Assembly: GCA_004431415.1 (NCBI GenBank)
Contig: QPMI01000462.1
Coordinates: forward strand, 1-40,146
From: Cyanophora paradoxa CCMP329
Lineage: Eukaryota > Plantae > Glaucophyta
DNA: 40,146 bases
Reading direction: 5' to 3'
The position numbers were made by a program, and so were the translations under genes. The notes beneath the pieces are model-generated. The model did not search any database, had not been told where the DNA came from, and saw only the letters and a list, made by a program, of their open reading frames with translations. Shown in pieces: positions 1 through 40,146 of the stretch (position 1 is its first letter; every line of letters starts with the position of its first letter).

Positions 1-242
1 CCGGAGGAGGAGACACGGCTGGCACAGCTCGTGGCGGTGACCTTTGAGGACCGCCTTGTGCTCGCCCGCTGCGCCCGCTCCCCGCTGGCCCCGTCCCCAT
101 GGCCCTCCAGATCGTCCACGCCGCGCCCCTTCCCCGGGGCTACACCGCTTCGAAGCCTCCGCTCTCTCTGCCGATGCAGGTGCCCTTTTCGTCCTCGCCA
201 CCCGGTCGAGGAAAGGGCAGTCCCTACTCGTCTTCGACCTCT
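1..242 (+). repeat. Direct duplicate of host coding segment 11046-11289, truncated by the foldback element
   Basis: Near-identical to 11046-11289 (two 1-bp homopolymer indels). Identity stops at ...TTCGACCTCT, where the element terminus begins. Confidence 0.92.
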
Positions 243-243
243 A

Positions 244-492
244 GATCGTCACTTTTGGCTCCAGGTACGTTCGGTACAAAATAGGTACAAAATGGTACGT
301 TGCCGTACCAGGTTCGTACCGCCCACTGTACCGTGCACCGACGGTACACCCGCTGCACCGTCGGTGCATTTGGTACGCGGCGGACTCGTTCGGTACACGT
401 CAGTACGCTGCCGTACCGTCGGTACGCGTCGGTTCACGGCACTGTGTCCAAGCTGCACCAGAACGCACCGCCGGGAGCCAAAAGTGAAGATC
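244..492. repeat. Terminal ~250-bp imperfect hairpin (left) with repeated palindromic ACCG(A/T)CGGT motifs
   Basis: 244-262 pairs with 474-492 (1 mismatch); inner stem 337-347 pairs with 413-423; palindromes at 333-349, 355-369 and 413-425. Confidence 0.85.
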
Positions 493-771
493 GGAGCCGC
501 GCACCGGACCAGCGTACCAGTATACGTATATATATAGGTATATGCGTATACGTACGCCGGCGGAGGGCGTCATTCCCCGCCCACTTCTCAGCCCGGCTAC
601 TAGAGAGCCATGGCTAGCCCAGTTCTCGCCCAGCTAGCAGAACTAGAGATCTAGAGCCAGATCGCCACCAAAGATTTGCCAGGCTGGCTCTGGCGTACGC
701 GTTCTGGCTAGAAATATATCAAAGCGTGGTATCTGATTCTTTGGGGGGTGATCTATCTATCTATCTATCTA

Positions 772-955
772 CGATTCTGACTGTGAATACATCTTACTGG
801 CCGCTGGTGGGCTCGTCTAGGCTGCACACACTGAAACTGAAACTGAAATTCTCTGCCTGCCGATTCTGACTACTGATACATCCAACTGGTCGATGGCGAA
901 CTCAACTAGGCTGTACAAACTGAAACGGAAACTGAAACTGAATTTCGCTGCCTGC
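772..955 (+). repeat. Diverged ~90-bp tandem duplication with (ACTGAA)n, preceded by a (TATC)n microsatellite; mirrored near 9777-9983
   Basis: Units 772-860 and 861-955 both read CGATTCTGAC...TACATC...CTAGGCTG..ACTGAAAC..CTGCCTGC. Confidence 0.8.
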
Positions 956-2944
956 CGCTCCTCTGCATAGCCTAGCGGCGGCTACGCAAAAGTATGCGTG
1001 CGGGCCAGCAAGGAAAGGGACCGGGGGGGACGCGACTAGGGATTCACGTGGGAGGGGAGGGCGGGAAGCGATGCGGCCCGCGCGCGCTCTAGGTCGTGCG
1101 GCACCTCGCCGAGCCCGATGCGCTGTGCGCATCGCGGTTAGCGAGCGCTCGAATCGAGGCGGGATCGAACGGGCCGCTGTGCACCTCGGCCAGGAGAGGG
1201 AGCAGCAGACCGGCTCGAGCTCGCCCCGCGGCCAGGATTCCCGCGACCGCGACCGCGAGGGCGAGGGCGACGCGCTCGCTGCGCTCGGAGAGTCAATCGA
1301 AAGAAAAGAAGCGTGCGCGCCGGCAAACGACCGCACCTGCGCCCGAGCGGCCGCAAGCATGAACTTCGAGAGCGCCAGCAGCCACACGTCCGGCGGAGAG
1401 CGGCATGCGCTGCGCTGCGCACGTCGCCGGCGTTACAACAAGATCAATGGGCAAGCAGCGGAGACAAGAGCGAGCACCTGGCCTGCGGAAGAAGTCGCCA
1501 AGCGAACTGGGCGGTGGTCTTCTGCTCGCGGGACCAGTCACGCCCGCTCCCTGGCCCGCCAGCGGAGTGAGGGATTGAATCAAAGGAGAGGAAACGAAAA
1601 GCACCTTGCTTCGCCTCCGCAGCCACCGCCTACGTGCTGCGCGTGCCTGTCAGCGGCAGAACGCCCATTGGCGACAGCCGCGGGAGGAATGGACAACAAA
1701 GGCAACAAGGAGGTCGACAGCGATGCGTTCGCGAGCGTTCGCGGCCGCAACCGGGAGCCAGCCGCCCTGAAGCAAGGCTCTGCGTTTGAAATCAGGCGGG
1801 CGACAGGCGGCGAGAGGGCAGAGGATGCAAGAAAGTACCTTCGAGCATCGTTCGCGCTTGAAGCTGACGATGTTCGCTGCGGCGGCAGCAAGTCCGTTCG
1901 ACCTGGTTTGAAAAAGCGGCATCAGAGACGCGGGCAGCGCTGCGAGACCCCGGAGGAGCCAACGAACCGACCCGCTGTGAGAGTGAAGCGCGTCCGCGCG
2001 GCAGCCTTCCGTCGAGGCTGCAGCTGCTGGCAGCAAGGCATTTGAAGGCAGCAAGTTTGGGGTACACGACTGATGGGGAAAAAAGGCTTGCGAGGCCCAC
2101 AGCGGCAGGGCCGCCGCGGCAGCCGCGCCGTAGTACAGCTTGTCGAGGCCACCTGAAGCGAATGCCAGCGGCTCTTGCGGCCCTCGCTCGCAGCGCCGCC
2201 CGCTGCAGCAACTTCGCGGGTGCTCGCAGCACGCAGCGCGCGGCAGCTACGAGCGTGCGAGCTTGTAACTACAGGTCCAGCTCCCCCCGTGGCGTCGTCC
2301 TTGCGCCGCGCCGATCTACAGCTAGATCGACCCGGCCCGCAACCCCGCGCCGGGCGACTTCGCCGCGCTGGCCGGCTTCTTTGCGTGGCTTTCAGCTCAC
2401 TTACATCCGCAGTATCTCTACTAGACAGCCCCGCGGTCGATTTGGAGGGTTGAGGTGCACGCCGGCCGTGGATGCGGTTCTGGTCGCCGGCGGAGCTCTC
2501 TCGCATGTTTCGGTGCATAGAGCGTCCCTTTGAGATGCTAACACAGTGCCTCTGACTCTGGACTGGCAGGACGTTGCGTGAGCGCGCGGACCGACGCAAC
2601 CTCCCGATCGGCGGTCGCCTCGGGTGCGCCTGCCAAGCACAGAATTGGGCCAGCGACGCGCGAGCGCGTGGCTGAAGAGGCCCAGACCGCCGGGATGGGT
2701 GAGCCGGCTCGGATCGTCGCAGTTTGGGAGACATTCTTCTACACTGCCTAGGTGAGCTGGCTGGGCCCGTGCGCGTCGCTGACGGGACGCGTACGCGTCG
2801 CTGACGGGGCGCGCCGGTAACGCAGGGGGTGCGGCGGGTGGCGACGCCACTCGCGGGGCGGGGCGGATCTGGAGGCGCGGCAGGCGGCCCCGTGACTTCC
2901 AGGATAGGGCGGAGGCGCTTCCTGCGGTGCTGCGGGTCACAGAG

Positions 2945-3826
2945 CGGAGCGGAGGCGGGCGGAGGCGCGGCGGGAGGCCGCGCGGCTCTCCGGGCGATGC
3001 AGAGGCGCGGCAGGCGGCCGCGCGGCTCGCCGGGCGGGACGGAGGCGCGGCGGGCGGCGGCGGCGGCTCGCCGGGCGATGCAGAGGCGCGGCGGGCCGCC
3101 GCGCGGCTCGCCGGGCGGGACGGAGGCGCGGCGGGCGGCGGCGGCGGCTCGCCGGGCGATGCAGAGGCGCGGCGGGCCGCCGCGCGGCTCGCCGGGCGGG
3201 GCGGAGGCACGGCGGGCGGCGGCGGCGGCTCGCAGGGAGGGGCGGAGGCGCGGCGGGCGGCCGCGCGGCTCGCAGGGCGGGACGAAGACGCGGCGGGCAG
3301 CGCGGCGGCTCGCGGGGCGGGGCGGAGGCGCGGCGGGCGGCCGCGCGGCTCGACGGGCGGGGCGGAGGCGCGCGGGCGGCCGCGCGGCTCGTGGGGCGGG
3401 GCGGAGGCGCGGCGGGCGGCCGCGCGGCTCGCAGGGCGGGACGAAGACGCGGCGGGCAGCGGCGGCGGCTCGCGGGGCGGGGCGGAGGCGCGGCGGGCGG
3501 CCGCGCGGCTCGACGGGCGGGGCGGAGGCGCGGCGGGCGGCGGCGGCGGCTCGCCGGGCGATGCAGAGGCGCGGCGGGCGGCCGCGCGGCTCGCGGGGCG
3601 GGACGGAGGCGCGGCGGGCGGCGGCGGCGGCTCGCGGGGCGGGACGGAGACGCGGCGGGCAGCGGCGGCGGCTCGCGGGGCGGGGCGGAGGCGCGGCGGG
3701 CGGCCGCGCGGCTCGTGGGCGGGGCGGAGCGCGGCGGGCGGCCGCGCGGCTCGACGGGCGGGGCGGAGGCACGGCGGGCGGCGGCGGCGGCTCGCAGGGA
3801 GGGCGGAGGCGCGGCGGGCGGCCGCG
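2945..3826 (+). repeat. GC-rich ~40-bp minisatellite
   Basis: Recurrent GGCGGAGGCGCGGCGGGCGGCCGCGCGGCTCG variants. Confidence 0.9.
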
Positions 3827-6800
3827 CTACGAGCTAGCACCGGGCCTCCGGCGACCTCAGAATCAAATCCAGCACCTTCACGAACCCCCGGGAGCGTCTC
3901 CGCGCCCGGATGTAACTTGTCAGATAAGATGTTTTACTTGGTGATATTTGCCGACTAGGCCCCTTGGTGGCAGGTTGGCAGTCTCAAGTAGCGCCCTCGA
4001 CCTGACTCCTTCGCGTCGTTCGGGGCCGCGACTGCCCCCAAATATGCACCCCGCCCAATTTGAGGGCGGGGAATCCGAATCTGACGCTCCTACAAGCTCG
4101 TTCGTGCTCCTAAGCTCGGCGCGGCGAGCTTGCAATTCTTTGCACATGTTCATGAGTCTCTTCACGCCATAAAAACATACTGAGTAAGTGGCATCTATGA
4201 GCGCCCGGAGACGATATCAGTGCTTGCAACTGTACATGCAGAGTATTTGACTCGAAGCTCAGGTCGCCCGGGCGCAGCTGCGGCGGGGAACAACTCCCAA
4301 ATAAAGTTTTTCCCGAGATCAATTTTGAGAGCCGATTCCCAGTACGCCCGTGCCTCTCTAGCTCACTTGCCGGCGGATGCGAGTCATTCAGTAGCGTCTT
4401 AGACAGGGCCTCGACGTGACTACCGGCTGCCGGGCTTCTACTCGCACGCCCTGCCGCGCGGGAAGATCCTGAAAAGCCCGCCAAGAATTATGGCGACTCG
4501 CCCTCCAAAATAATGCGCAGCGCGCTACGAGCTAGCACCAGGCCTCCGGCGACCTCAGAATCAAATCCAGCACCTTCAAGAACCCCCTTGAGCGTCTCCG
4601 CGCCCGGATGTAACTTGTCAGATAAGATGTTTTACTTGGTGATATTTGCCGACTAGGCCCCTTGGTGGCAGGTTGGCAGTCTCAAGTAGCGCCCTCGACC
4701 TGACTCCTTCGCGTCGTTCGGGGCCGCGACTGCCCCCAAATATGCTCCCCGCCCAATTTGAGGCGGGGAATCCGAATCTGACGCTCCTACAAGCTCGTTC
4801 GTGCTCCTAAGCTCGGCGCGGCGAGCTTGCAATTCTTTGCACATGATCATGAGTCTCTTTACGCGATAAAAGAATATATACTGAGTAAGTAGCACCTATG
4901 AGCGCCCGTAGACGATATCAGTGCTTGCAACTGTACATGCAGAGTATTTGACTCGAAGCTCAGGTCGCCCGGGCGCAGCTGCGGCGGGGAACAACTCCCA
5001 AATAAAGTTTTTCCGAGATCAATTTTGAGAGCCGATTCCCAGTACGCCCGTGCCTCTCTAGCTCACTTGCCGGCGGATGCGAGTCATTCAGTAGCGTCTT
5101 AGACAGGGCCTCGACGTCACTACCGGCTGCCGGGCTTCTACTCGCACGCCCTGCCGCGCGGGAAGATCCTGAAAAGCCCGCCAAGAATTATGGCGACTCG
5201 CCCTCCAAAATAATGCGCAGCGCGCTACGAGCTAGCACCGGGCCTCCGGCGACCTCAGAATCAAATCCAGCACCTTCACGAACCCCCGGGAGCGTCTCCA
5301 CGCCCGGATGTAACTTGTCAGATAAGATGTTTTACTTGGTGATATTTGCCGACTAGGCCCCTTGGTGGCAGGTTGGCAGTCTCAAGTAGCGCCCTCGACC
5401 TGACTCCTTCGCGTCGTTCGGGGCCGCGACTGCCCCCAAATATGCACCCCGCCCAATTTGAGGCGGGGAATCCGAATCTGACGCTCCTACAAGCTCGTTC
5501 GTGCTCCTAAGCTCGGCGCGGCGAGCTTGCAATTCTTTGCACATGATCATGAGTCTCTTACGCGATAAAAAGAATATATACTGAGTAAGTAGCACCTATG
5601 AGCGCCCGTAGACGATATCAGTGCTTGCAACTGTACATGCAGAGTATTTGACTCGAAGCTCAGGTCGCCCGGGCGCAGCTGCGGCGGGGAACAACTCCCA
5701 AATAAAGTTTTTCCCGAGATCAATTTTGAGAGCCGATTCCCAGTACGCCCGTGCCTCTCTAGCTCACTTGCCGGCGGATGCGAGTCATTCAGTAGCGTCT
5801 TAGACAGGGCCTCGACGTCACTACCGGCTGCCGGGCTTCTACTCGCACGCCCTGCCGCGCGGGAAGATCCTGAAAAGCCCGCCAAGAATTATGGCGACTC
5901 GCCCTCCAAAATAATGCGCAGCGCGCTACGAGCTAGCACCGGGCCTCCGGCGACCTCAGAATCAAATCCAGCACCTTCACGAACCCCCGGGAGCGTCTCC
6001 GCGCCCGGATGTAACTTGTCAGATAAGATGTTTTACTTGGTGATATTTGCCGACTAGGCCCCTTGGTGGCAGGTTGGCAGTCTCAAGTAGCGCCCTCGAC
6101 CTGACTCCTTCGCGTCGTTCGGGGCCGCGACTGCCCCCAAATATGCACCCCGCCCAATTTGAGGGCGGGGAATCCGAATCTGACGCTCCTACAAGCTCGT
6201 TCGTGCTCCTAAGCTCGGCGCGGCGAGCTTGCAATTCTTTGCACATGTTCATGAGTCTCTTCACGCCATAAAAACATACTGAGTAAGTGGCATCTATGAG
6301 CGCCCGGAGACGATATCAGTGCTTGCAACTGTACATGCAGAGTATTTGACTCGAAGCTCAGGTCGCCCGGGCGCAGCTGCGGCGGGGAACAACTCCCAAA
6401 TAAAGTTTTTCCCGAGATCAATTTTGAGAGCCGATTCCCAGTACGCCCGTGCCTCTCTAGCTCACTTGCCGGCGGATGCGAGTCATTCAGTAGCGTCTTA
6501 GACAGGGCCTCGACGTCACTACCGGCTGCCGGGCTTCTATCGCACGCCCTGCCGCGCGGGAAGATCCTGAAAAGCCCGCCAAGAATTATGGCGACTCGCC
6601 CTCCAAAATAATGCGCAGCGCGCTACGAGCTAGCACCGGGCCTCCGGCGACCTCAGAATCAAATTCAGCACCTTCACGAACCCCCGGGAGCGTCTCCACG
6701 CCCGGATGTAACTTGTCAGATAAGATGTTTTACTTGGTGATATTTGCCGACTAGGCCCCTTGGTGGCAGGTTGGCAGTCTCAAGTAGCGCCCTCGACCTG

Positions 6801-7008
6801 ACTCCTTCGCGTCGTTCGGGGCCGCGACTGCCCCCAAATATGCACCCCGCCCAATTTGAGGGCGGGGAATCCGAATCTGACGCTCCTACAAGCTCGTTCG
6901 TGCTCCTAAGCTCGGCGCGGCGAGCTTGCAATTCTTTGCACATGATCATGAGTCTCTTCACGCCATAAAAACATACTGAGTAAGTGGCATCTATGAGCGC
7001 CCGGAGAC
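3823..7008. repeat. Tandem array of ~700-bp units (4 full copies plus ~0.55 copy)
   Basis: CGCGCTACGAGCTAGCAC starts at 3823, 4521, 5221, 5922 and 6619; the units are highly similar. Confidence 0.97.
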
Positions 7009-7012
7009 TATA

Positions 7013-7612
7013 CCGCGCCCGCCGCCGGCCGCGCCTCCTGGGGCCGCCCCGCACGGCGAGCCGCGCCCGCCGCCCGCTGTTCCTCCGCCCCGCCCCGCCG
7101 GCCCTGTCGCCGCCCGCCGAGCCTCCGCCCCGCCCGCCGGCCCTGTCGCCGCCCGCCGAGCCTCCCCCCGGCCCGCCGGCCCTGTCGCCGCCCGCCGAGC
7201 CTCCGCCCCGGCCCGCCGGCCCTGTCGCCGCCCGCCGAACCTCTGCCCCGCCCCGAGAGCCGCGTCCACTGCCCGCCGCCTGCTGCGCCTTCGCTCCGCC
7301 CCGCATGCTGCGCCCGCCGCCCGCCGCGCCTCCTGAGACTCTGAGACCGCCCCGCCCGGCGAGCCGCGCCCGCCGCCCGCCGCGCCTCCGGCCCGCCCAG
7401 GGAGACGCGCCGCCGCGCGCCGCGCCTCCGCCCCGCCCCGCGAGCCGCCGCCGCCGCCCGCCGCGCCTCCGGTCCGCCCGGGGAGACGCGCCGCCGCGCG
7501 CCGCACCTCCGCCCCGCCCGCGAGCCGCCGCCGCCGCCCGCCGCGCCTCCGTCCCGCCCATCGAGCCGCGCGGCCGCCCGCCGCGCCTCCGCCCTGCCCC
7601 GCGAGCCGCGCG
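7013..7612 (-). repeat. GC-rich minisatellite, same family as 2945-3826 but inverted, with a ~35-bp sub-array at ~7093-7240
   Basis: CGAGCCGCGCGGCCGCCCGCCGCGCCTCCGCC motifs; CCCGCCGGCCCTGTCGCCGCCCGCCGA occurs four times. Confidence 0.88.
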
Positions 7613-7643
7613 GACGGGGGCGGCGGGGCGGCGGGGGGCGCAC

Positions 7644-7985
7644 GGCGGCGGCGGTGAGGGCGGCGAGGGTGCGGTCGGAGACGCCCATGCGGCTCACGTC
7701 GAGCCGCTCCAGGCTGCGCGCGCCCCGCCCCGTCGGCCCAGGCCCGGCCCGAGCGGGGCGGGGCGGGGCGGGGCGGGGCGGCGGGCCTTGCGGCGTGCAC
7801 GGCGATCGTGAGGCCGGCCTCGTCCGCCACGCCCCTGCGCGGGGCTCGCCGGGCCGGCGCGGCGACTGGGCTCGCGGGCGGGGCGCACGGGTAGTCCAGG
7901 AGGAGGGCGGCGAGCCGTGGCAAGGCGCCCATGGTCGCCGCCACCGCCCCGTCCTCCAGCCACCCGCTGCCCCGCCCGCTCGCTG
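7644..7985 (-). pseudogene. Captured fragment of a leucine-rich-repeat (RNI-like) gene, about two exons with a GC-rich intron
   Basis: Minus-strand peptides LEDGAVAATMGALPRLAALLLDYP and SLERLDVSRMGVSDRTLAALT; GCGCGCAG acceptor near 7714 and GTGCGC donor near 7643. Confidence 0.6.
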
Positions 7986-7993
7986 GAGATGTA

Positions 7994-10505
7994 GTAGAAG
8001 CACTCCCAAACTGCGACGATCCGAGGCGGCTCACCCATCCCGGCGGTCTGGGCCTCTTCAGCCACGCGCTCGCGCGTCGCTGGCCCAATCTGTGCTTGGC
8101 AGGCGCACCCGAGGCGACCGCCGATCGGGAGGTTGCGTCGGTCCGCGCGCTCACGCAACGTCCTGCCAGTCCAGAGTCAGAGGCACTGTGTTAGCATCTC
8201 AAAGGGACGCTCTATGCACCGAAACATGCGAGAGAGCTCCGCCGGCGACCAGAACCGCATCCACGGCCGGCGTGCACCTCAACCCTCCAAATCGACCGCG
8301 GGGCTGTCTAGTAGAGATACTGCGGATGTAAGTGAGCTGAAAGCCACGCAAAGAAGCCGGCCAGCGCGGCGAAGTCGCCCGGCGCGGGGTTGCGGGCCCG
8401 GTCGATCTAGCTGTAGATCGGCGCGGCGCAAGGACGACGCCACGGGGGGAGCTGGACCCGTAGTTACAAGCTCGCGTGCTCGTAGCTGCCGCGCGCTGCG
8501 TGCTGCGAGCACCCGCGAAGTTGACGCAGCGGGCGGCGCTGCGAGCGAGGGCCGCAAGAGCCGCTGGCATTCGCTTCAGATGGCCTCGACAAGCTGTACT
8601 ACGGCGCGGCTGCCGCGGCGGCCCTGCCGCTGTGGGCCTCGCAAGCCTTTTTTCCCCATCAGTCGTGTACCCCAAACTTGCTGCCTTGAAGTGCCTTCAC
8701 GTGCCTTGCTGCCAGCAGCTGCAGCCTCGACGGAAGGCTGCCGCGCGGACGCGCTTCACTCTCACAGCGGGTCGGTTCGTTGGCTCCTCCGGGGTCTCGC
8801 AGCGCTGCCCGCGTCTCTGATGCGCTTTTTCAAACCAGGTCGAACGGACTTGCTGCCGCCGCAGCGAACATCGTCAGCTTCAAGCGCGAACGATGCTCGA
8901 AGGTAATTTCTTGCATCCTCTGCCCCTCTCGCCGCCTGTCGCCCGCTGATTTCAAACGCAGAGCCTTGCTTCAGGGCGCTGGCTCCCGGTTGCGGCCGCG
9001 AACGCTCGCGAACGCATCGCTGTCGACCTCCTTGTTGCCTTTGTTGTCCATTCCTCCCACGGCTGTCGCCAATGGGCGTTCTGCCGCTGACAGGCACGCG
9101 CGGCACGTAGGCGGTGGCTGCGGAGGCGAAGCAAGGTGCTTTTCGTTTCCTCTCCTTTGATTCAATCCCTCACTCCGCTGGCGGGCCAGGGAGCGGGCGT
9201 GACTGGTCCCCGCGAGCAAAAGACCACCGCCCAGTTCGCTTGGCGACTTCTTCCGCAGGCCAGGTGCTCGCTCTTGTCTCCGCTGCTTGCCCATTGATCT
9301 TGTTGTAACGCCGGCGACGTGCGCAGCGCAGCGCATGCAGCTCTCCGCCGGACGTGTGGCTGCTGGCGCTCTCGAAGTTCATGAGCTCGGGCGCAGGTGC
9401 GGTCGTTTGCCGGCGCGCACGCTTCTTTTCTTTCGATTGACTCTCCGAGCGCAGCGAGCGCGTCGCCCTCGCCCTCGCGGTCGCGGTCGCGGGAATCCTG
9501 GCCGCGGGGCGAGCTCGAGCCGGTCTGCTGCTCCCTCTCCTGGCCGAGGTGCTCAGCGGCCCGTTCGATCCCGCCTCGATTCGAGCGCTCGCTAACCGCG
9601 ATGCGCACAGCGCAGCGGGCTCGGCGAGGTGCCGCACGACCTACAGCGCGCGCGGGCCGCATCGCTTCACGCCCTCCCCTCCCACGTGAATCCCTAGTCG
9701 CGTCCCCCGCGGTCCATTTCCTTGCTGGCCCGCACGCATACTTTTGCGTAGCCGCTGCTAGGCTATGCAGAGGAGCGGCAGGCAGCGAAACTCGATTTCA
9801 GTTTCCGTTTCAGTTTGTACAGCCTAGTTGAGTTCGCCATCGACCAGTTGGATGTATCAGTAGTCAGAATCGGCAGGCAGAGAATTTCAGTTTCAGTTTC
9901 AGTGTGTGCAGCCTAGACGAGCCCACCAGCGGCCAGTAAGATGTATTCACAGTCAGAATCGTAGATAGATAGATAGATAGATCACCCCCCAAAGAATCAG
10001 ATACCACGCTTTGATATATTTCTAGCCAGAACGCGTACGCCAGAGCCAGCCTGGCAAATCTTTGGTGGCGATCTGGCTCTAGATCTAGATCTCTAGTTCT
10101 GCTAGCTGGGCGAGAACTGGGCTAGCCATATGCATGGCTCTCTAGTAGCCGGGCTAAGAACTGGGCGGGGAATGACGCCCTCCGCCGGCGTACGTATACG
10201 CATATACCTATATATATACGTATACTGGTACGCTGGTCCGGTGCGCGGCTCCGATCTTCACTTTTGGCTCCCGGGCGGTGCGTTCTGGTGCAGCTTGGAC
10301 ACGGTGCCGTGAACCGACGCGTACCGACGGTACGGCCGCTGCACCGTCGGTGCGTTTGGTACGCGGCGGACTCGTTCGGTACACGTCAGTACGCTGCCGT
10401 ACCGTGGGTGCACGGTACAGTGGGCGGTACGAATCTGGTACGACAACGTACCAATTTTGTACCTATTTTGCACCGAACGTACCTGGAGCCAAAAGTGACG
10501 ATCTA
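7994..10505 (-). repeat. Right arm of long inverted repeat
   Basis: Reverse complement of 242-2742. Confidence 0.95.
10253..10503. repeat. Terminal ~250-bp imperfect hairpin (right)
   Basis: 10253-10271 pairs with 10485-10503; loop 10337-10396 is inverted relative to the rest of the arm. Confidence 0.85.
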
Positions 10506-10519
10506 CCGGCGCCCCGCCC

Positions 10520-11674
10520 CGCCCCGCTGGACGCCTCCACCCCCGACCCCACCGCCGAGGGTCGCTGGATCTACTGCACCTTTGCTGCCTCTGGGACGTG
10601 CGTGATTCGACCTGTGCCCCCCTTCCCGCCGACCCGTCCTCGCCTCCAGCGGGCGGCGCAGAAGCCTGTTGGCACTCTTCATGCCCTCCGCCGAGTTGCT
10701 AAACGTGCAGCCGCCTGAGGGCGCCGGCCCCACACCGGACTGCAGTCCGCCCCTTCCACCTTTCCTATCTCAGCGCGGCGTCTTCTGACCTAGCACGCAG
10801 CACTGGCGCAGCTGGACCTCGCGGGGACCGCCCCGCATGGATCCACCGCCCGCGTCGTCCCCGGCGGTGCGCGCCTCGCCCACCCGCGCCGCTGAGCAAA
10901 GAACCCTCCGGGTGCAGGAGTGCATTTCTTCCTGCAGGGGTTTGACCCGGCGCGGCGCACACCGCCGGCACCACCGCTGCCGCGGCGCCCCGGGGGCCCG
11001 CCGCCTCCCCCGCCACTGCCGTTCGGGCTGCCGCCGGTGGACCTCCCGGAGGAGGAGACACGGCTGGCACAGCTCGTGGCGGTGACCTTTGAGGACCGCC
11101 TTGTGCTCGCCCGCCTGCGCCCGCTCCCCGCTGGCCCCGTCCCCATGGCCCTCCAGATCGTCCACGCCGCGCCCCTTCCCCGGGGCTACACCCGCTTCGA
11201 AGCCTCCGCTCTCTCTGCCGATGCAGGTGCCCTTTTCGTCCTCGCCACCCGGTCGAGGAAAGGGCAGTCCCTACTCGTCTTCGACCTCTCCCCGGGCCCC
11301 GCCAACCTCGCCTGGACTCTGCCGCCGGGCCGCCTCGCCCATCCTGCCTGCACCTCAACCTACGTGCCGCCATCCGGCCCCGCCTGCGCACCGCCAGCGA
11401 CGGCTCCCCCGGGGCGCCTCCCGCACCCGTGGATGCCCACATCGCCACCTGCCTAGCTGCCTCACCCAAAACCCCAGTCTGGTGCAACTTCTCACCGGTA
11501 CCCGAATCTGCTGGACTGACAGTCCCGCAGGTCGCGGTGGGCACGCGAGGGGGGCAACAACCCTTCTCCGCATCCCGGAGCCATTCCTGCGCATGCGGGG
11601 GCCGCAGCCCTATCTGTAGGCTTGATTTCGAATTCGAAATTGCACCTCATGAAGCTCGTGTCTCGTATACGTAG
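10520..11674 (+). CDS. 3' exons of a GC-rich host gene of unknown function (possibly a beta-propeller C-terminus)
   Basis: Coding-like peptides LAQLVAVTFEDRLVLARL, ALSADAGALFVLAT..LLVFDL and ICRLDFEFEIAPHEARVSYT with stop at 11674; beta-strand-like pattern only. Confidence 0.45.
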
Positions 11675-11679
11675 CTAGT

Positions 11680-12200
11680 GACCCTGAGCGTAGACCAAGC
11701 CCAGCCCTGATGATGAAGCCCTCAAAGTCGAGTCGTAGTCATGAAGCTAGTGAACACTAATCCCCCGCTAAGCCGAGACCCTCAAGATCCGATTATCATG
11801 ATCTTGACGTGACTCTGGCCGACTCGGCAAGGGCCTTGTGATCATGATGAACTTCAGAAGCACTACGCCGAGCCCCTCAGGCCTAATAATTAAATGATCA
11901 TGAAGCCTTGAGCTCATGTGGCGGGGCCTCCGACTCGGCGAGGCTCGCAGAGCCTCGGAGTCGACAGCTTCCTTTCAAGTTTCAAGTTTGGCTCCCTGAT
12001 TATCACATATGGTGATCATGACTCAGTGACTCGTGATCATGATCAGTGACCGTCGCACACTGACGACGTCATGCCATGATGGAGGCTCTGAGGTCGAGCC
12101 TTACCGTACCCTAGTACTGAGTCATGATCAGGGCCTTGCTGCCTCGTAACCCTTGACTCAGTGATCATAATGATCATGTCATGCCGCAGTGCGTACTAGC
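11680..12200. repeat. TGATCA/TCATGA palindrome-rich low-complexity zone with a hairpin at 11931-11963
   Basis: Dense TGATCATGA motifs; CGACTC..CGAGGCTC-GCA-GAGCCTCG-GAGTCG stem-loop. Confidence 0.65.
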
Positions 12201-18494: not shown

Positions 18495-19500
18495 ATGGAG
18501 CACGCTGTAGCTTGCAAGATAGGGCAGCATCAGGACGAATGCGGTCCTACAATCACAAAGCGTGCGATGGATGACGGCCGCGGCAACATCAACGGACTTG
18601 TTCCGGCTTCGGTCGGTGATGACCACCAGAAGCGTGCTCGTACCGAAGGCAATGCGCCGGATTTTGAGGTTTCAAAGACTGGTGCGCGGCCGCTTTTAAA
18701 TTGTTGATTGTGTTTGGATCTCTGAATTCCAATCTGGCTCTGCAGACACTGAGAGTGACGTGCTGGATGTCGCTTGCGCCCAGCCCCAGGTAAAGCTGCG
18801 AGTGTGCCGGTGTTGGGACTTCTGCTGGATCTTGGTCGAAGATTCTGATCGGACAAAGCAGCAGGAGCAGCGTGAAATAGTGGTAACCGATGTTCAGTCC
18901 GTGCCGGTTCCTGACGGCGATGCGATTCTTAATGAAACTGAGAATTCCAAGAATGATCTTATGGACAATATCGACGCACGTCGCGCCCAGCTCCAGGTAT
19001 GGTTTTCATCATTCCCCCCGAGTTCACTTGCATATGAATATAATGTGATGCATCTCCCAGGTGGATAATGCATTCGATCTCGAAACGTCAAAGGAGCAGG
19101 AGCAGGATGCAATCGTGGCGACCGGCGTTCAGCCCGTGCCGGTTCCTGACGGCGATGCGATTCTTAATGAAACTGAGAATTCCAAGAACGATCTTATGGA
19201 CAATATCGATGCACGTCGCGCCCAGCTCCAGGTATGGTTTCTCTTTCCCCCCCTGAATTCACCTGTTTACGAATTGAATTCGACGCACCTTCCAGGTGGA
19301 TAATGGAGTCGATTCCGTGCGGGCTGCTGCCGGCGATGCGAAGCTAAATGTGCTTGAGAATGCCAAGAACGCTGTCATGGAATTCGAAGATGCACATCGC
19401 GCCTCTTGCCAGTCCCAGGTTTGGCTTTAATAAAACGACAGACTCAGATTGACGCTTTTTGCAGGTTGATGATGGATTCGATTCGAATTCAGTGACGTCA
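18495..19500 (+). CDS. Hypothetical protein built from tandemly duplicated exons
   Basis: Coding repeat VPVPDGDAILNETENSKNDLMDNIDARRAQLQ occurs twice plus a diverged third copy, each followed by a GT donor. Confidence 0.5.
18860..19420 (+). repeat. ~236-bp exon+intron tandem duplication (2 copies plus a diverged partial third)
   Basis: 18860-19070 resembles 19095-19305; the third copy lies at ~19297-19420. Confidence 0.85.
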
Positions 19501-34799: not shown

Positions 34800-35545
34800 G
34801 GACCAATCATGATCATGTACTGGAGTTAACGTTCCGATGGCCGGGCACGGGTCGTGATCTTGATCATGAGCCCCGGGCCCCGGGCATGGCTGCCCTTCCT
34901 GCAGCTCAGCGGCTGTACATGTGATCGCACCTCGCCGCCGGCGCCCCGGGGGCTACTTGCCTCTGCCACTGCCGCCGTGCCACGCGCATGTACGGTGCTG
35001 ATCACGAATCATGCTCATGATCATGAGGCCCGGGCCCGGGGCTTGGTTGCCCTCCCTGCAGCGGAAGTCACATTTTCCCCGCCTGGGCCCCAGGGGCCTC
35101 CGCGGGCTCCCTTCAAGGCTTCCTAAAGATCTCAAAGTCTGCCAATGCCGCACTGCCACATGTTCACTGAGTCAGTGCTCATTACGAGACATGACATGAT
35201 CATGAGCCCCGGACCTGGCTGCCCTGCCTCAGGGCCTGCAGCTGTGATCCCACCGGTACCTCGCCCCGGGGCCGGCGCCTCCGAGGCCGGGCGCCCTGAG
35301 GGCTCTAGCTCCTGGAGTCCTCGCCTCTGCCACTGCCGCCGTGCCACGCGCATGTACGGTGCTGATCATGAGGCCCGGGCCTGGGGCTCGTCATGCCATG
35401 ATGAGTCATGATATGATCATATAAGCCCCGGGCCTGGCTGCCCTAGGCCTGCCTTCAACTGTAGCCGATGTCACGATCGCAAGTCGTGGTACGGTCCGAT
35501 GATCATTATCGATATCATTCATGAGCCCCGGGCCCGGCTTCAATT
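34800..35545 (+). repeat. Degenerate ~160-180-bp tandem repeat anchored on TGATCATGAG(G/C)CCCGG
   Basis: Anchors at 34861, 35018, 35197 and 35363; an exact 46-bp duplicate at 34959-35004 and 35323-35368. Confidence 0.8.
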
Positions 35546-35743: not shown

Positions 35744-35987
35744 GGGGGATGGTGGAATGGGAAGGGGGGGTCTTGGCGGGGGGAGTCGGCACCAGGCAGG
35801 GTCGGGGGGGGCCTTGGCGGGCGCTGGGGGTCGGGGGGGTGGAATGGGAAGGGGGATCTTGGCGGGGGAGTCGGCACCAGGCAGGGTCGGGGGGGCCTTG
35901 GCGGGCGCTGGGGGGGCGGGGGCCGCATGCCTGGGGGGGGATGGGGGGGGTACGCGGACCGGCTTCGGGGGGGGGGGGGGGGGGGGG
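35744..35987 (+). repeat. G-rich ~85-bp tandem duplication followed by poly-G
   Basis: GGTGGAATGGGAAGGGGG..GAGTCGGCACCAGGCAGGGTCGGG..CCTTGGCGGGCGCTGGGGG occurs twice; long G run ends at ~35987. Confidence 0.85.
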
Positions 35988-36796
35988 TTACGCGGTGTCG
36001 CGTGCCGCGATTCCCTCGGATTAGGCTAGCCGGCAGTCTATGCGTAGCCGCTAGCCCTAGTCTAGTGCTATCGAGCAGCTAGCTCTAGCACTCTCTGTAT
36101 TCTGACTTAGCGCCGGGCGCGACTCCGTTTGGGGGTACGCGATCCCTGGACGGGTACACTTGTGAATAGACCACTTGTGCTCCCAGCTACAGCCCCAGCC
36201 CGTGCGTGACCGCACGGACGCTGCACCGGGTGGGAATCCTCTCATCCGACAGGCGCCATCTGCTCACGGAGCCAGAACCCCGATCATCAGCGACCCGTCA
36301 TCAGCAACCGACCCAGCTCGGCGACCGCGGCTCAGCCGGCGCGCAGGTAGACCTCAGCAGAGGTCGTGGGTCGCTTCTCGCGCCCCGCCTGCGCCGCTCC
36401 GGGCTGATCCGCAGTTGGCGACCGAACATTCTGGAAAGAACCAGAACTTAGTCCTGCGGATCCAGGAACGCGCGCGAATACCGAGGGATCCCCGTCCCGA
36501 TCGGATCGTCGCCGTTTCCTGAGCGAGCTGCGTGCGAGCCCGTGGGATCATTCCTGATCGGTCGCTAGTCACTCGCCGCGACGCCAGCCTTCTCCGGCTG
36601 TTGCGATCGTGCTGGACAAGACGAAGAGCGATCGGATCGACGGCTGAGGCGTGCGCGCCCGAGCTGTCTCCGGAATCGCCGCAGCCGAGCTAGTGAGCTT
36701 GCTCGCCGCTGCTGTGGACCACGACGGCCTCGGATCTCGAGCGAGGCACATTCTCTCACGGAAAAGCGTGGCATTACGTCGCCGCTTGACCTGAGA

Positions 36797-37255
36797 ATGT
36801 CCTCGGGGACCGGAGCCTCCGCGGAGTTCGTCGTCCGGGCCGCGCACGCGCGTGGCGCCGCCGACATGGACTCTATGAGCGGATCAAATGTTTTGCAATG
36901 GATCCAGAGCCTGCCGAAGCTGCCGCCGGGCAGCGATCAGCGCACGGTTCAGGACCACCTCCGCCAGTTCGAGAGCTGCGCGAGCATGAGCAAGGACTTG
37001 CTCAGTGTCTCGCCGACTGCACACATTGAAGTGCAGAAGCGAACTGGGTGGGCTCTTCTCGGCACGCTAGATCACGGGCACCCCGTGCGCCAGAACATCT
37101 CGCTGTTCCAGAGCGCCGAGCAGATCGACACTCGCGAGCTCGAGAAGCTGAAGGCGTACCGGGCCGAGCGTGCGCGCACGAGCACGGCGGACCCGCGAGA
37201 CGTCGCGATCCTCGAGACGCTCGACGAGAAGATCGCGCAAGCCGAGGAGGGCTTG
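36797..37255 (+). CDS. gag: Probable gag N-terminal portion
   Basis: ORF immediately upstream of RT (SLPKLPPGSDQRTVQDHLRQFE); assigned mainly by position. Confidence 0.45.
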
Positions 37256-38580
37256 CAGCGGACCGCCCCAGCAACCTGCTCTATTACGAGCACGTGATCA
37301 AACTCACGACTCGCCTTCCGGTGTTCACGCCTCCGCGGCGTATGAACCCGCACGCCGAGGAACACGCCCGCAAGGAAATTCAGAAACTCCTTGAGCTTGG
37401 GCTGATCGAGCCCTCCCAAGCGGCATATGGCTCGCCGGTAGTGCTGGCCCCCAAAAAGGACGGCACTTGGCGTTTCTGTGTCGACTATCGGAGGCTGAAT
37501 CAGATCACCGAGCGGGACGTGTTTCCCCTACCCCGCATAGACGACCAGCTCGAGCGCCTCCGCGGCTCGATGGTCTTCTCGACTGCTGACGCGACTGCCG
37601 GCTTCTGGCAGCTGCCTCTGCACCCCGGCTCCCGAGCCTACACTGCATTTGTGGTCCCCTGGGGTCACTTTCAGTGGAAGGTTACGCCGTTTGGGGTCAC
37701 GAACGGGCCCGCGGCATTCTCCCGCGCGATCACTGCGATCCTGGGCCCTTGCTGACCACCTGCGTCGTCGCGTACATCGACGATATCACGGTCTTCTCAC
37801 CGTCCATCGATCAGCACCTTCTAGACTTGAAGGCGCTCTTCGAGACGATCTCTAAGGCGAACCTGCGCCTGAAGCCGTCGAAGTGCCGCTTCTGCGTGCC
37901 TGAAATCGACCTTCTCGGCCACCGCATCTCCGCCGAAGGGATCCGCCAGGACCCTGCGAAGACCAAGGTGATCACGGACTGGCAGACGCCGAAGAACGCG
38001 GACGAGCTCCGCTCGTTCCTCGGCCTCGCCGGCTACTACCGCCGCTTTGTCGAGAACTTCTCCAAAGTGGTGCACGCCATGCAGCGCCTTCTATTGAAGG
38101 ACGCCGTCTGGAGTTGGCCAGAGGACGGCCCCGCCGACCGCGCCTTTAAGGAGCTGAAAGAACTCCTGGGCCGCGATATTATATTGCGGTTCCCGGACTT
38201 CTCGAAGCCCTTCATTCTCCAGACGGACGCCAGCACCTACGCTATCGGCGCAATTCTGAGCCAGGCCGACGACAAAGGCGTCGAGCGGCCGCTCGCGTTC
38301 ATCAGCCGCACGCTGCTGCCGGCCGAGATGAACTACTCCGCTACGGAGCTGGAGTGCCTCGCAGTAGTCTGGGCCATTAAGTATTGGCGCCACTATCTGC
38401 TGGGCGGCCCCCAGTTCCTGGTGCGGACCGACCACCACGCCCTCCAGTGGCTGAAGACGCTGGACCCGACGACGGGCCGCCTCGGTCGCTGGTCCCTGCT
38501 CTTGCAGGCCTACGACTTTGAGATCGTCTACCGCCCTGGCAAGCAGAACGGGGGTCCCGACGCGTGCTCGCGTCTCCCTA
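37255..38580 (+). CDS. pol: Gypsy pol: reverse transcriptase and RNase H (frameshift near 37750)
   Basis: SPVVLAPKKDGTWRFCVDYRRLN, PFGVTNGPA, YIDD (37773-37784), LRSFLGLAGYYRRF, LQTDAS, ELECLAVVWA, TDHHAL and YRPGKQNGGPDACSRLP. Confidence 0.96.
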
Positions 38581-40146
38581 AGGACCACCCCGTCTGGCAG
38601 CCAGGCGGTGCAGACGGTTCCTCGTCCAAGCCCGCGGCCTACAAGGGCGCCGAAGGCTTCGGCATCCCGCAACATGCTGTAGGGGCTGAGCCTGAGGATC
38701 CCGACGTCCCGCTGGGCATCTTTAGGATGCAGCTGGGCCCGACCGAGCGGGCCCTGCGCCAGCTCGCCAACTCCGCCGGCTTCCGCGCGGAAGCCCCAGC
38801 CGAGGGTGGCCGAGCCGCTAGACGCCGAGCGCCCGGGCGGCGCCTGCGAGCGCCCCCTCTTCCCCGCCGGGCCGCTCCTCTTATGCAGAGGAGGAGTCGC
38901 GGCCCCTGTGCCAGCCAGTGCTCCTGAGGCCGAGCCCGACGCCGGCGCCCCTGAAGCGCCCGCGCCCGAGCCTGAGGGTGAGGCTGGCGGTGCTGCGGAA
39001 ACCGATTCCGACGCCGAGCCCCCGCCGCCAGAGCGCGCGCCGCGACGCCTGCCCCGCGAGCTCGCCAAGCTTGCTGCGTCGGCTGGGTTCGCTGAGGCCA
39101 AGGCCTCCGCCTCGGCTACTGACGCCGCCACGCGCAAGCGAGCGCGGGCCGCCCCAGAGCGCTTCGCGCCTCCCGCGCCAGAGTCGGTCTCGCCGCCCCG
39201 AAACGACGAGAGCCGGCCCGGCGCCCGCTGTCGAGGAGCGCGAGGCTCCCTCGGACGCGGAGATGCCCGACGCCCCTGAGGGCGACCTGGGCGCCCCGGC
39301 CGCGCTGCTAGAGGACGCTCACGCAGAGGCCGAGGCCTCGGGCGAGATCGATGACGAGTCGCTGCCGGAAGGGCCTGTCCCCTCCGACGCCTGCGACGCT
39401 GACGGCTTCCCCCTCGCTCTTGCGGAGCGAGTCCCGAAGCGCTCGGAAACCGGGCCCCGTCGGTGGGGCGCCAAGGGATTTGCCGAGCCGCGGCCCCTGC
39501 ATCCCGACGCGCTCTTCCTCGCGGCCCGCCTTGAGGCGGCAGCCTCGAGATGAGTACAACACGCGCCACTGGCGCTCCCGGTCGACCCCTCGGATCGGCC
39601 GGTGCCGATTCATATTGAGTGGGAGCCGGAGGACCCTGAGGGCGAGCCGCCTCCCGGGCCTCCGCGCCGACGCTCGCTCTCCCGGAGACTGCTCGCCACC
39701 AGATCCGCGTTCGGCCGGTCCCCCGGACCCAAGCCAGCGCCGCGGGCTCGAGGTCGCCCCTCTGCCCGCGGGCAGGCTTCCGACGACGCCGCCCCGCTCG
39801 AGCCTGAGACGGTCGCCGCCGAGGCCGCTGCCCCGCAGCGGTGGGTAGAACTCGACCCTAGAGGCCGGGACGTTCGCCCGCCGTGCAAGCCGGTCTTCGT
39901 GGATACCGTCCTCGACGCGTGGGCCTGCGGACCCTCGCCAGCCGTCGATGGGGCGCTCCCCGACGCGCTGCGCCGTATGTTCCCGCCCGAGAAGCGCAAG
40001 CGTCTGCTCGCCGCTCAGAAGGAGGATTCCTTCTGCAAGAAGCTTCTCGCCTTCCACGCAGAGGGCGAGAATCCAACTGTCTGTACCCGCGGCTCGAGGC
40101 GCGACGCAGATCCCTGCTCGCCCAGCTGCGCTCACTGCCTGCGGGC

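What the first reader, a model, noticed from the sequence alone, without database searches (positions are those of the whole stretch)
242..10505. 10.3-kb nested-symmetry foldback element: hairpin, 2.5-kb arm, cargo, minisatellite, 700-bp array, then the mirror image
Seen: ~2.5-kb inverted arms, each capped by its own hairpin, enclosing two different unique segments, two oppositely oriented copies of one GC minisatellite and a central tandem array. No transposase, Rep or polymerase is visible. Known: Foldback and Pack-MULE elements have long TIRs and carry cargo, but MULEs make ~9-bp TSDs and none is present. Only a TA at each end (242-243, 10504-10505) could be a TSD. Inference: a non-autonomous member of a possibly undescribed long-TIR, hairpin-ended cargo element family.
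Basis: partly seen in the sequence, partly recalled or inferred. Interest (0 to 1): 0.88.

Follow-up and report, generated by a model that had tools for sequence, protein, structure and literature searches.

The report
Foldback transposon splitting a Cyanophora gene
The 10.3-kb mirror-symmetric structure is real and is best read as a non-coding "foldback"-type DNA transposon inserted in a gene of the glaucophyte alga Cyanophora paradoxa. This is a known kind of element in a lineage where I found no report of one, and its odd feature is that it sits between two tandem copies of 784 bp of the host gene instead of a short target duplication.

Summary
Inverted arms 242-2766 and 7969-10505 are about 98-99% identical outside one flipped 87-bp piece. 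They enclose 187-bp and 351-bp unique pieces, one 40/81-bp GC minisatellite in opposite orientations, and 4.56 copies of a 699-bp unit. Each arm tip is a ~250-bp MITE-like module bounded by a 19-nt inverted repeat that occurs only four times in the window. That module is packed with GTAC motifs phased at about 10 bp. Nothing in the element looks coding.

The window comes from Cyanophora paradoxa contig tig00020754. The element interrupts a host gene. Its left flank (1-242) recurs at 11046-11289, and gene models on other contigs give both intact junctions. The element therefore lies between two tandem copies of a 784-bp gene segment, and its first triplet TAG ends the upstream gene copy. The uninterrupted site has no TA, so the proposed TA target duplication is refuted. 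"Cargo" is unsupported.

Best reading: a non-autonomous foldback-type class II transposon built like Tetris, Galileo and FB, superfamily unknown. I could not test whether the 784-bp duplication is real or a chimeric join of two insertion alleles. Interest is moderate.

The parts
1..241 (+). Left flank 'A': the end of the upstream copy of the duplicated host-gene segment (coding, ...LLVFDL). It runs off the window's left edge.
   Evidence: Identical to 11046-11289 except for two 1-bp C-run indels. tblastn of P0121-P0124 maps here. Protein P0122 from contig tig00020753 ends exactly at this junction.
242..10505 (.). The whole foldback element, 10,264 bp, with termini TAGATCG...CGATCTA.
242..494 (+). 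Left cap: a MITE-like end module with outer 19-nt TIR at 244-262 and inner inverted copy at 474-492. It holds 13 GTAC motifs, the first eight about 10 bp apart.
   Evidence: The maximum GTAC count in any other 254-bp stretch of the window is 5, and 0 of 5000 shuffles reach 13.
337..423 (.). Core of the left cap that is inverted relative to the right cap (counterpart 10323-10409). It is bounded by the perfect 11-bp inverted repeat ACCGACGGTAC / GTACCGTCGGT.
   Evidence: Direct-orientation BLAST hit at 95.4%; alignments.
495..2766 (+). Body of the left arm (flanking domain of the long TIR). Non-coding. Contains an 89-bp repeat in 1.9 copies at 772-937.
2767..2953 (.). Unique-L: 187 bp, with a 22-bp unit in 2 copies and degenerate minisatellite-like sequence.
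2954..3827 (+). GC minisatellite, G-rich strand, 40-bp unit in about 22 copies (81-bp higher order).
   Evidence: score 1220-1405.
3823..7012 (+). Middle domain: 4.56 direct copies of a 699-bp unit. Non-coding, no Rfam match.
7013..7617 (-). The same GC minisatellite in reverse complement. It is shorter and more diverged, in two sub-blocks at 7068-7255 and 7347-7611.
7618..7968 (.). Unique-R: 351 bp, GC-rich, no detectable homology.
7969..10505 (-). Right arm including the right cap (10253-10505; TIR copies at 10253-10271 and 10485-10503).
10506..11289 (+). Downstream copy of the duplicated 784-bp host-gene segment (X = 10506-11045, A' = 11046-11289). It continues uninterrupted into 'B' from 11290, which gives the intact A|B site GACCTC^TCCCCG.

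Best explanation
A non-autonomous, foldback-type class II (cut-and-paste, TIR) DNA transposon of Cyanophora paradoxa, inserted in a copy of a multi-copy host gene.

Likely working (inferred): a transposase encoded elsewhere binds the 19-nt terminal repeat and the GGTAC/GTACC motifs phased at about 10 bp in the 250-bp end modules. It then cuts exactly at TAGATCG...CGATCTA. The long arms, the inverted minisatellites and the 699-bp middle array are non-coding passengers and expansions, as in Tetris, Galileo and FB.

Shown: the ends are precise and mirror-symmetric. They abut two points of the host coding sequence 784 bp apart. The locus therefore reads U-(X-A)-element-(X-A)-B, with no footprint at either intact junction, and the element's first triplet (TAG) terminates the upstream gene copy.

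Most likely cause of the 784-bp duplication (inferred): one integration event in which the two ends were joined to opposite strands 784 bp apart and the gaps were filled. That amounts to a giant target-site duplication.
For: Source:
- The RT ORF is 100% identical to EukProt Cyanophora paradoxa tig00020754_g13695.

Element ends:
- The 19-nt TIR occurs 4 times in nested inverted order and nowhere else.
- The caps hold 13 GTAC each, against at most 5 anywhere else in the window and 0 of 5000 shuffles.

Architecture:
- Arm, tandem-repeat domain and non-coding middle match the published foldback plan (PMC4079207).
- No coding signal.

Insertion in a host gene:
- Flank A recurs at 11046-11289 and there continues into B.
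- P0123 (tig00020661) is the intact U-X-A-B protein.
- P0122 (tig00020753) is U-X-A and ends at ...LLVFDL, exactly at the element's TAG.
- P0124 is the window's own X-A-B model.
- The two offset reading frames of P0122 and P0123 fix a unique DNA for the intact U|X site. Its right half equals window 10506-10539.
- No host-gene piece lies inside the element.

Relative age, and the case against a read artefact:
- The arms differ by 43 substitutions, 13 indels (including 6, 6, 8 and 10 bp) and one inversion.
- The duplicated flank has 0 substitutions in 242 bp.
- The arms are therefore older than the insertion or duplication, and the palindrome is not a chimeric read.
Against: - Only one copy is seen. 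Copy number, simple insertions with ordinary TSDs and an autonomous partner could not be looked for, because no other Cyanophora DNA is in the reachable collections.
- No short TSD can be read, so no superfamily can be assigned.
- The upstream copy of X is not in the window. It is inferred from a gene model on a different contig.
- The first 242 bp carry homopolymer indels typical of a thinly covered PacBio/Canu contig end. The A|element junction in this contig could therefore come from reads of another allele or paralog.
- Kilobase-scale target duplications are not the norm for DDE transposases.
Confidence: 0.7

Rival explanations
1. The transposon is real but the 784-bp duplication is not. 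Two alleles or paralogs each carry a simple insertion of the same 10-kb element, one at A|B and one at U|X. The assembler joined them inside the near-identical element.
For: The gene exists on at least four contigs. The A|element junction is also on tig00020753. The window's first 242 bp show homopolymer errors, which suggests few supporting reads. The assembly is PacBio RSII/Canu (PMC6704402), and the element is longer than many such reads.
Against: It needs two independent insertions of a 10-kb element within 784 bp, in the same orientation. Neither expected reciprocal junction (element|B, U|element) was seen, although my searches could not have found them. Both breakpoints follow the same tetranucleotide CCTC, which fits one coupled event slightly better.
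Confidence: 0.2
2. Two-step origin: local re-insertion followed by unequal crossing-over between the two copies, or hybrid-element / alternative transposition between sister chromatids. Either would leave one element between tandem duplicates.
For: Class II elements can create tandem direct duplications with a transposon at the joint (PMC3744419). The element offers reversed-end pairs, namely the inner TIRs at 474(-) and 10253(+).
Against: In the reversed-ends model each duplicate starts with a transposon copy. Here U-X is contiguous in the upstream copy (P0122). No footprint or retained short TSD is present at the intact A'|B junction or at the intact U|X junction, and models that pass through an earlier ordinary insertion predict one.
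Confidence: 0.12
3. Not a mobile element. It is a local inverted segmental duplication (palindrome) that formed in place around a satellite array by break-induced or fold-back replication, with the flank duplication as a by-product.
For: Only one copy is observed. Large palindromes with satellite centres and flanking duplications can arise from replication-based rearrangement (general knowledge). There is 4-bp microhomology (CCTC) at both breakpoints.
Against: No part of the 10.3 kb resembles the surrounding gene. The boundaries coincide exactly with a 19-21-nt terminal repeat and a phased motif cluster found nowhere else. The arms are more diverged than the flank duplication.
Confidence: 0.06
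4. An assembly artefact from a fold-back (missed-adapter) chimeric long read.
For: The PacBio CLR assembly and the position at the very start of the window are both typical settings for such artefacts.
Against: The arms differ by 43 substitutions, multi-base indels and an 87-bp flipped piece. The interior is not symmetric: different unique pieces, minisatellites of 874 and 605 bp, and a direct 699-bp array that starts at unit position 1 and ends at about position 395. A second contig independently carries the A|element junction.
Confidence: 0.02

Closest known systems
Tetris (Drosophila virilis) and the generic foldback plan (FB, Galileo-like)
   Same: Non-autonomous. Long TIRs built of an outer flanking domain and then a domain of tandem repeats. 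A non-coding middle domain. Satellite-like arrays inside. The TIR tips form or are shared with a MITE (DAIBAM for Tetris; here the 250-bp cap) (PMC4079207).
   Different: The arms here are longer (2.5 kb against up to 1.7 kb) and mostly unique sequence. Each tip is itself a complete mini inverted-repeat module. Tetris has 8-10 bp TSDs, whereas here no short TSD is readable and the flanks are a 784-bp duplication. The host is a glaucophyte alga rather than an insect. No sequence similarity was tested because no library was available.
Mutator/Foldback elements (Drosophila FB, Tm1 of root-knot nematodes) and Pack-MULEs
   Same: Composite TIRs of variable length with short internal repeats. MITE-like and long forms occur in one family (PMC3169594). 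About 10-bp repeat periodicity near the tips (my recollection of Potter 1982 for FB; not checked here).
   Different: The defining 9-bp TSD is not seen. No MULE transposase was found; the only hit is a sub-threshold SWIM match (E = 0.12, 12.4 bits against a cut-off of 19.6) on a CxCxC string, which I take as chance. No captured gene fragment was demonstrated.
Transposon-associated tandem direct duplications (reversed-ends transposition of Ac/Ds)
   Same: A class II element sits at the joint of a tandem direct duplication of host sequence (PMC3744419).
   Different: In that model each duplicate is initiated by an element copy and carries 8-bp TSDs. Here only one element is present and U-X is contiguous upstream.
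Flip/flop terminal hairpins of linear replicons (parvovirus ITRs, poxvirus and chlorovirus termini)
   Same: The central part of a terminal inverted-repeat module is found in both orientations at the two ends. The existence of flip/flop forms in those replicons is from general knowledge.
   Different: The element is integrated, has no ORFs, and its cap is only 48% self-complementary. The inversion is bounded by an 11-bp inverted repeat, so simple intramolecular recombination explains it.

Membership tests
Foldback-type DNA transposons (structural class) | Long terminal inverted repeats making up a large share of the element | tested here: met
   Arms of 2525 and 2537 bp, 97-100% identical per 100 bp outside the flipped core.
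Foldback-type DNA transposons (structural class) | Tandem sub-repeats inside the inverted parts, and a non-coding middle domain | tested here: met
   The 40/81-bp minisatellite lies in opposite orientation at 2954-3827 and 7013-7617. The middle is a 699-bp unit in 4.56 copies. No coding signal.
Foldback-type DNA transposons (structural class) | Short (7-10 bp) target-site duplication | tested here: inconclusive
   The two flanks come from host positions 784 bp apart, so a short TSD cannot be read. No 7-10 bp direct repeat abuts the ends.
Foldback-type DNA transposons (structural class) | Several copies at unrelated sites; mobilised by an autonomous relative | not testable with these tools
   No other Cyanophora DNA is available. 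TIR scans of three collections gave only chance hits. Protein-proxy searches were blank.
Mutator superfamily / Pack-MULE | 9-bp TSD | tested here: inconclusive
   Same reason as for the short TSD above. None is visible.
Mutator superfamily / Pack-MULE | MULE transposase or SWIM remnant, or captured host gene fragments as cargo | tested here: not met
   Only a sub-threshold SWIM hit (E = 0.12). The unique segments have no Pfam match and no host-gene similarity.
Tc1/mariner-Stowaway (TA target) | Insertion at TA with TA duplication | tested here: not met
   The intact A|B site reads GACCTC^TCCCCG. The intact U|X site reads GGGCCTC^CCGGCG. Neither contains TA, so the TA belongs to the element's termini.
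MITE (for the 250-bp cap alone) | Small, non-coding, own TIRs | tested here: met
   253 bp, with 19-nt TIRs at 244-262 and 474-492 (1 mismatch).
MITE (for the 250-bp cap alone) | High copy number as a free-standing element | not testable with these tools
   No further TIR copies in the window.
Reversed-ends / alternative-transposition tandem duplication | An element copy at the start of each duplicated segment, with matching TSD on one side | tested here: not met
   The upstream copy has U-X contiguous, from P0122 and P0123 in two reading frames.
Hairpin-telomere linear replicon / virus-like element | Encodes its own replication or integration proteins (pPolB, Rep, integrase) | tested here: not met
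   No Pfam family in any ORF of the element. No match in the phage or plasmid collections.

The most novel reading that the evidence does not exclude
The element belongs to an undescribed superfamily whose two ends integrate in an uncoupled way. A single transposition event would then duplicate hundreds of base pairs of target, here 784 bp holding several exons, with no footprint. The flipped cap core would reflect a hairpin intermediate at the ends. This would be a one-step, transposon-driven route to tandem exon or segment duplication.
Probability: 0.12. Interest if true: 0.7.

Novelty: new member of a known kind. Interest (0 to 1): 0.4.

Why it matters
Foldback elements are known from insects, nematodes, plants and sea urchin. 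My literature search found no paper that mentions both Cyanophora and foldback, and 11.5% of the C. paradoxa genome is reported as unknown repeats (PMC6704402). A well-delimited element with a defined 19-nt terminus and a phased GGTAC motif gives a concrete probe for classifying part of that fraction and for finding its transposase.

If the 784-bp flank duplication is real, the locus is a clean natural example of a DNA transposon producing an in-frame truncated gene copy and a tandem multi-exon duplication at once. If it is not real, the locus marks a mis-join between contigs tig00020753 and tig00020754 that users of this reference should know about.

Tried and rejected
- Rfam at gathering threshold on the whole window, Rfam in E-value mode on 1-11700, and a tRNA scan: nothing. 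The 699-bp unit is therefore not a known RNA gene array.
- Pfam on 30 ORFs of the element, its flanks and the low-GC island: nothing above threshold. The SWIM hit (E = 0.12) sits on 'CNCTC' and is rejected as chance.
- Exact scans for the 19-nt TIR in viral, metagenome and prokaryote-genome collections: 0, 8 and 6 single hits, about the number expected by chance. None extends beyond 25 nt, and L004 and L009 are the same bacterial gene.
- Arm and 699-bp unit against the plasmid and phage collections: no match.
- Copy number by proxy, looking for Cyanophora gene models overlapping other copies: arm ORF 942-2042(+) and ORF 1925-3826(-) gave no hit. Ten ATG ORFs of the element are not in the protein collection.
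- Fetching DNA of tig00020753 and tig00020661 through their proteins: not on record.
- The LRR-like look of unique-R on the minus strand was my own reading only. No HMM supports it, so it is not claimed.
- Paralogy among ORFs of the 12-35 kb island: none.
Host-gene evidence rests on database proteins by id and on single ORFs by reference.
- The contig is not human and is not a virus or toxin locus.
Full report

Yes. Self-BLAST and the repeat finder give one inverted pair, 242-2766 against 7969-10505, with 2556 aligned columns at 95.7% identity. A global alignment shows that nearly all of the shortfall comes from one 100-column block. Elsewhere the identity is 97-100% per 100 bp.

Between the arms lie these parts:
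- 187 bp of unique sequence, 2767-2953;
- a G-rich minisatellite, 2954-3827, with a 40-bp unit in about 22 copies and an 81-bp higher order;
- a tandem array, 3823-7012, of 4.56 units of 699 bp that are 97-99% alike, in which units 1, 4 and 5 share one variant and units 2 and 3 share another;
- the same minisatellite reverse-complemented, 7013-7617;
- 351 bp of different unique sequence, 7618-7968.

**2. The ends**

The 19-mer GATCGTCACTTTTGGCTCC occurs at 244(+), 474(-), 10253(+) and 10485(-) with at most one mismatch. It occurs nowhere else in 40 kb, and 0 matches are expected in shuffles. Each arm tip is thus a ~250-bp module with its own short inverted repeats.

That module folds much better than shuffles (z = -7.5). 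It is only 48% identical to its own reverse complement, against 29% for shuffles with a maximum of 41%. It is a MITE-like module rather than a perfect hairpin.

The module holds 13 GTAC tetramers, mostly as GGTAC or GTACC. The first eight lie at 265, 274, 285, 295, 305, 316, 328 and 344, about one helical turn apart. No other 254-bp stretch of the window has more than 5, and none of 5000 shuffles of the cap reaches 13. A terminal repeat followed by phased short motifs is the usual layout of transposase-binding ends. That reading is inference.

An 87-bp core (337-423) matches 10323-10409 in direct orientation at 95% identity. It is therefore flipped in one arm relative to the other. It is bounded by the perfect 11-bp inverted repeat ACCGACGGTAC / GTACCGTCGGT. 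Recombination between those repeats is a sufficient explanation.

**3. Coding capacity**

I found none. ORFs in the arms show GC1, GC2 and GC3 about equal, and the long left-arm ORF is broken in the right arm. Thirty ORFs gave no Pfam family above threshold. A SWIM match (E = 0.12, 12.4 bits against a cut-off of 19.6) sits on a CxCxC string in the 699-bp unit, and I take it as chance. Rfam and the tRNA scan are blank.

**4. Where the window comes from**

The RT/RNase H ORF at 37590-38924 is 100% identical to EukProt EP00741 Cyanophora paradoxa tig00020754_g13695.t1. That assembly is PacBio RSII plus Canu with Illumina correction. The reported genome GC content is 67.6%, with 29.4% repeats, of which 11.5% of the genome is unknown repeats (PMC6704402). 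The contig is a eukaryotic alga. It is not human and not a virus.

**5. The flanks: the most informative result**

Window 1-242 recurs directly at 11046-11289. There are no substitutions and two single-base deletions in C runs. The repeat reaches the first base of the window, so its full length cannot be seen here.

At 242 the sequence enters the element...GACCTC|TAGATCG. At 11289 it continues as ...GACCTC|TCCCCGGG.

I searched the representative protein library with ORF 10896-11453. It returned only Cyanophora proteins:
- P0123 (tig00020661_g12576, 469 aa) reads U-X-A-B without interruption.
- P0121 (tig00020682_g12843) reads X'-A-B.
- P0124 (tig00020754_g13693) is the window's own X-A-B model.
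- P0122 (tig00020753_g13684, 582 aa) reads U-X-A and ends at ...LLVFDL. That is exactly the codon before the element's first triplet TAG (alignment).

tblastn places P0123 residues 171-397 on 10503-11354. Residues 1-170 (U) map nowhere in the window, and nothing maps inside the element.

The element's left end therefore abuts the A|B point of the gene and its right end abuts the U|X point, 784 bp upstream. The locus reads U-(X-A)-element-(X-A)-B.

P0122 and P0123 translate the U|X region in reading frames offset by one base. Together they fix a unique DNA for the intact site...GAACCCGGGCCTC^CCGGCGCCCC.... Its right half equals window 10506-10539. This assumes that the two contigs share the sequence, and the single consistent solution over 63 nt supports that.

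Four consequences follow:
- Uninterrupted versions of both junction points exist, so the 10.3 kb is an insertion relative to them.
- Neither intact site contains TA.
- Neither intact junction carries a footprint.
- Both breakpoints directly follow CCTC.

**6. Relative ages, and the artefact question**

Outside the flipped core the arms differ by 43 substitutions. About a dozen of these lie in the last 35 bp, where the homology decays, which leaves about 1.3% over the rest. The arms also differ by 13 indels, including ATGCAT, AGATCT, an 8-mer and a 10-mer.

At 1.3%, three or more substitutions would be expected in the 242-bp flank repeat. None is seen (Poisson P about 0.04). The arms are therefore older than the flank duplication. 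This fits an element that already had diverged arms when it arrived.

These differences and the asymmetric interior also exclude a missed-adapter palindromic read. The two C-run indels in the first 242 bp look like residual long-read errors at a thinly covered contig end.

**7. What it is, and how it most likely works**

Best reading (confidence about 0.7): a non-autonomous foldback-type class II transposon. Its plan matches that drawn for Tetris and other foldback elements, namely an outer flanking domain, a tandem-repeat domain and a non-coding middle domain. In Tetris the TIR tips are shared with a MITE and the internal repeats can seed satellites (PMC4079207).

Mobilisation in trans through the 19-nt terminus and the GGTAC array is inferred. 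The superfamily is unknown. [quoted passage not shown] Tm1 is a Mutator/Foldback family with 9-bp TSDs (PMC3169594). No such TSD or transposase remnant is visible here.

**8. The 784-bp duplication**

I see three readings.

(a) One integration event with the two ends joined to opposite strands 784 bp apart, followed by gap filling. This predicts precise element ends, two perfect copies and no footprint, which is what is seen. It would be unusual for a DDE enzyme.

(b) Two steps: a nearby re-insertion followed by unequal exchange, or sister-chromatid or alternative transposition. In the documented reversed-ends model each duplicate begins with an element copy and retains TSDs (PMC3744419). Here U-X is contiguous upstream and no footprint is seen.

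The gene lies on at least four contigs, the A|element junction is also on tig00020753, and the window's first 242 bp are poorly polished, so this cannot be excluded.

I rate these (a) about 0.45, (b) 0.12 and (c) 0.2 within the transposon reading. An in-place, non-mobile palindrome gets about 0.06, because nothing in the 10.3 kb resembles the surrounding gene and the boundaries coincide with a dedicated terminal repeat.

**9. What could not be done**

No other Cyanophora DNA is held in the searchable collections. The TIR scans gave only chance hits. Protein-based proxies for further copies were blank. The neighbouring contigs could not be fetched.

Copy number, ordinary TSDs, free-standing caps and an autonomous partner therefore remain untested. 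They are the decisive next steps, together with long reads spanning the locus.

**10. Verdict**

The structure is real. 'Non-autonomous long-TIR element' is supported. 'TA TSD', 'cargo' and 'hairpin-ended' are not. It is a new member of a known kind, a foldback-type transposon, in a lineage where I found none described. Interest is moderate at 0.4. It is carried mainly by the footprint-free 784-bp target duplication, which is either an unusual integration product or a flag for a mis-join in the reference assembly.

Noticed in passing
window 12000-35000: A 23-kb island at about 48-53% GC lies between flanks at 64-75% GC, in a genome reported at 67.6% GC. Only short ORFs are present (344 aa or less), with no Pfam match and no internal paralogy. 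From the gene numbering, at most one gene model (g13694) can lie between the X-A-B gene (g13693) and the RT gene (g13695). It may be foreign or degenerate DNA.
   Followed up: partly
window 36500-39000 (+): A fragment of a Ty3/gypsy-type retrotransposon (RT plus RNase H) equals gene model tig00020754_g13695. Paralogs at 72-88% identity lie on at least six other Cyanophora contigs. The very GC-rich sequence after it (39-40 kb, 75% GC) runs to the window end.
   Followed up: partly
window 1-242 against 11046-11289: The only differences are two single-C deletions in C runs in the first 242 bp, and they break the reading frame of the left copy. They look like unpolished long-read errors at a contig end. 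The A|element junction is also present on contig tig00020753, so the two contigs probably overlap or are mis-separated.
   Followed up: partly
window 609-614 and 646-651 (against the right arm): Two of the indels between the arms are palindromic hexamers (ATGCAT, AGATCT) inside a CTAG-rich stretch just inside the cap. An AT-rich near-palindrome (TATACGTATATATATAGGTATATGCGTATACGTA) lies at 522-556.
   Followed up: no
window 11289 and inferred U|X site: Both host breakpoints directly follow the tetranucleotide CCTC (GACCTC^T and GGCCTC^C). This could be microhomology or a target preference. With only two sites it cannot be judged.
   Followed up: partly
window 35751-35942: A G-rich 85-bp tandem repeat (2 copies, 84-93% matches) lies at the boundary between the low-GC island and the retrotransposon region. 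A 52-bp direct repeat pair lies at 34956 and 35320.
   Followed up: no
window 18854-19313: A 235-bp unit in 2 copies (86%) lies inside the low-GC island. It overlaps ORFs that are 73% identical to each other at the protein level.
   Followed up: no
L004:9138-9162 and L009:4151-4175: A Bacteroidetes MAG and a metagenome contig share a 25-nt exact match to the element's terminus. The context is an unrelated, identical bacterial gene, so this is a chance match.
   Followed up: yes
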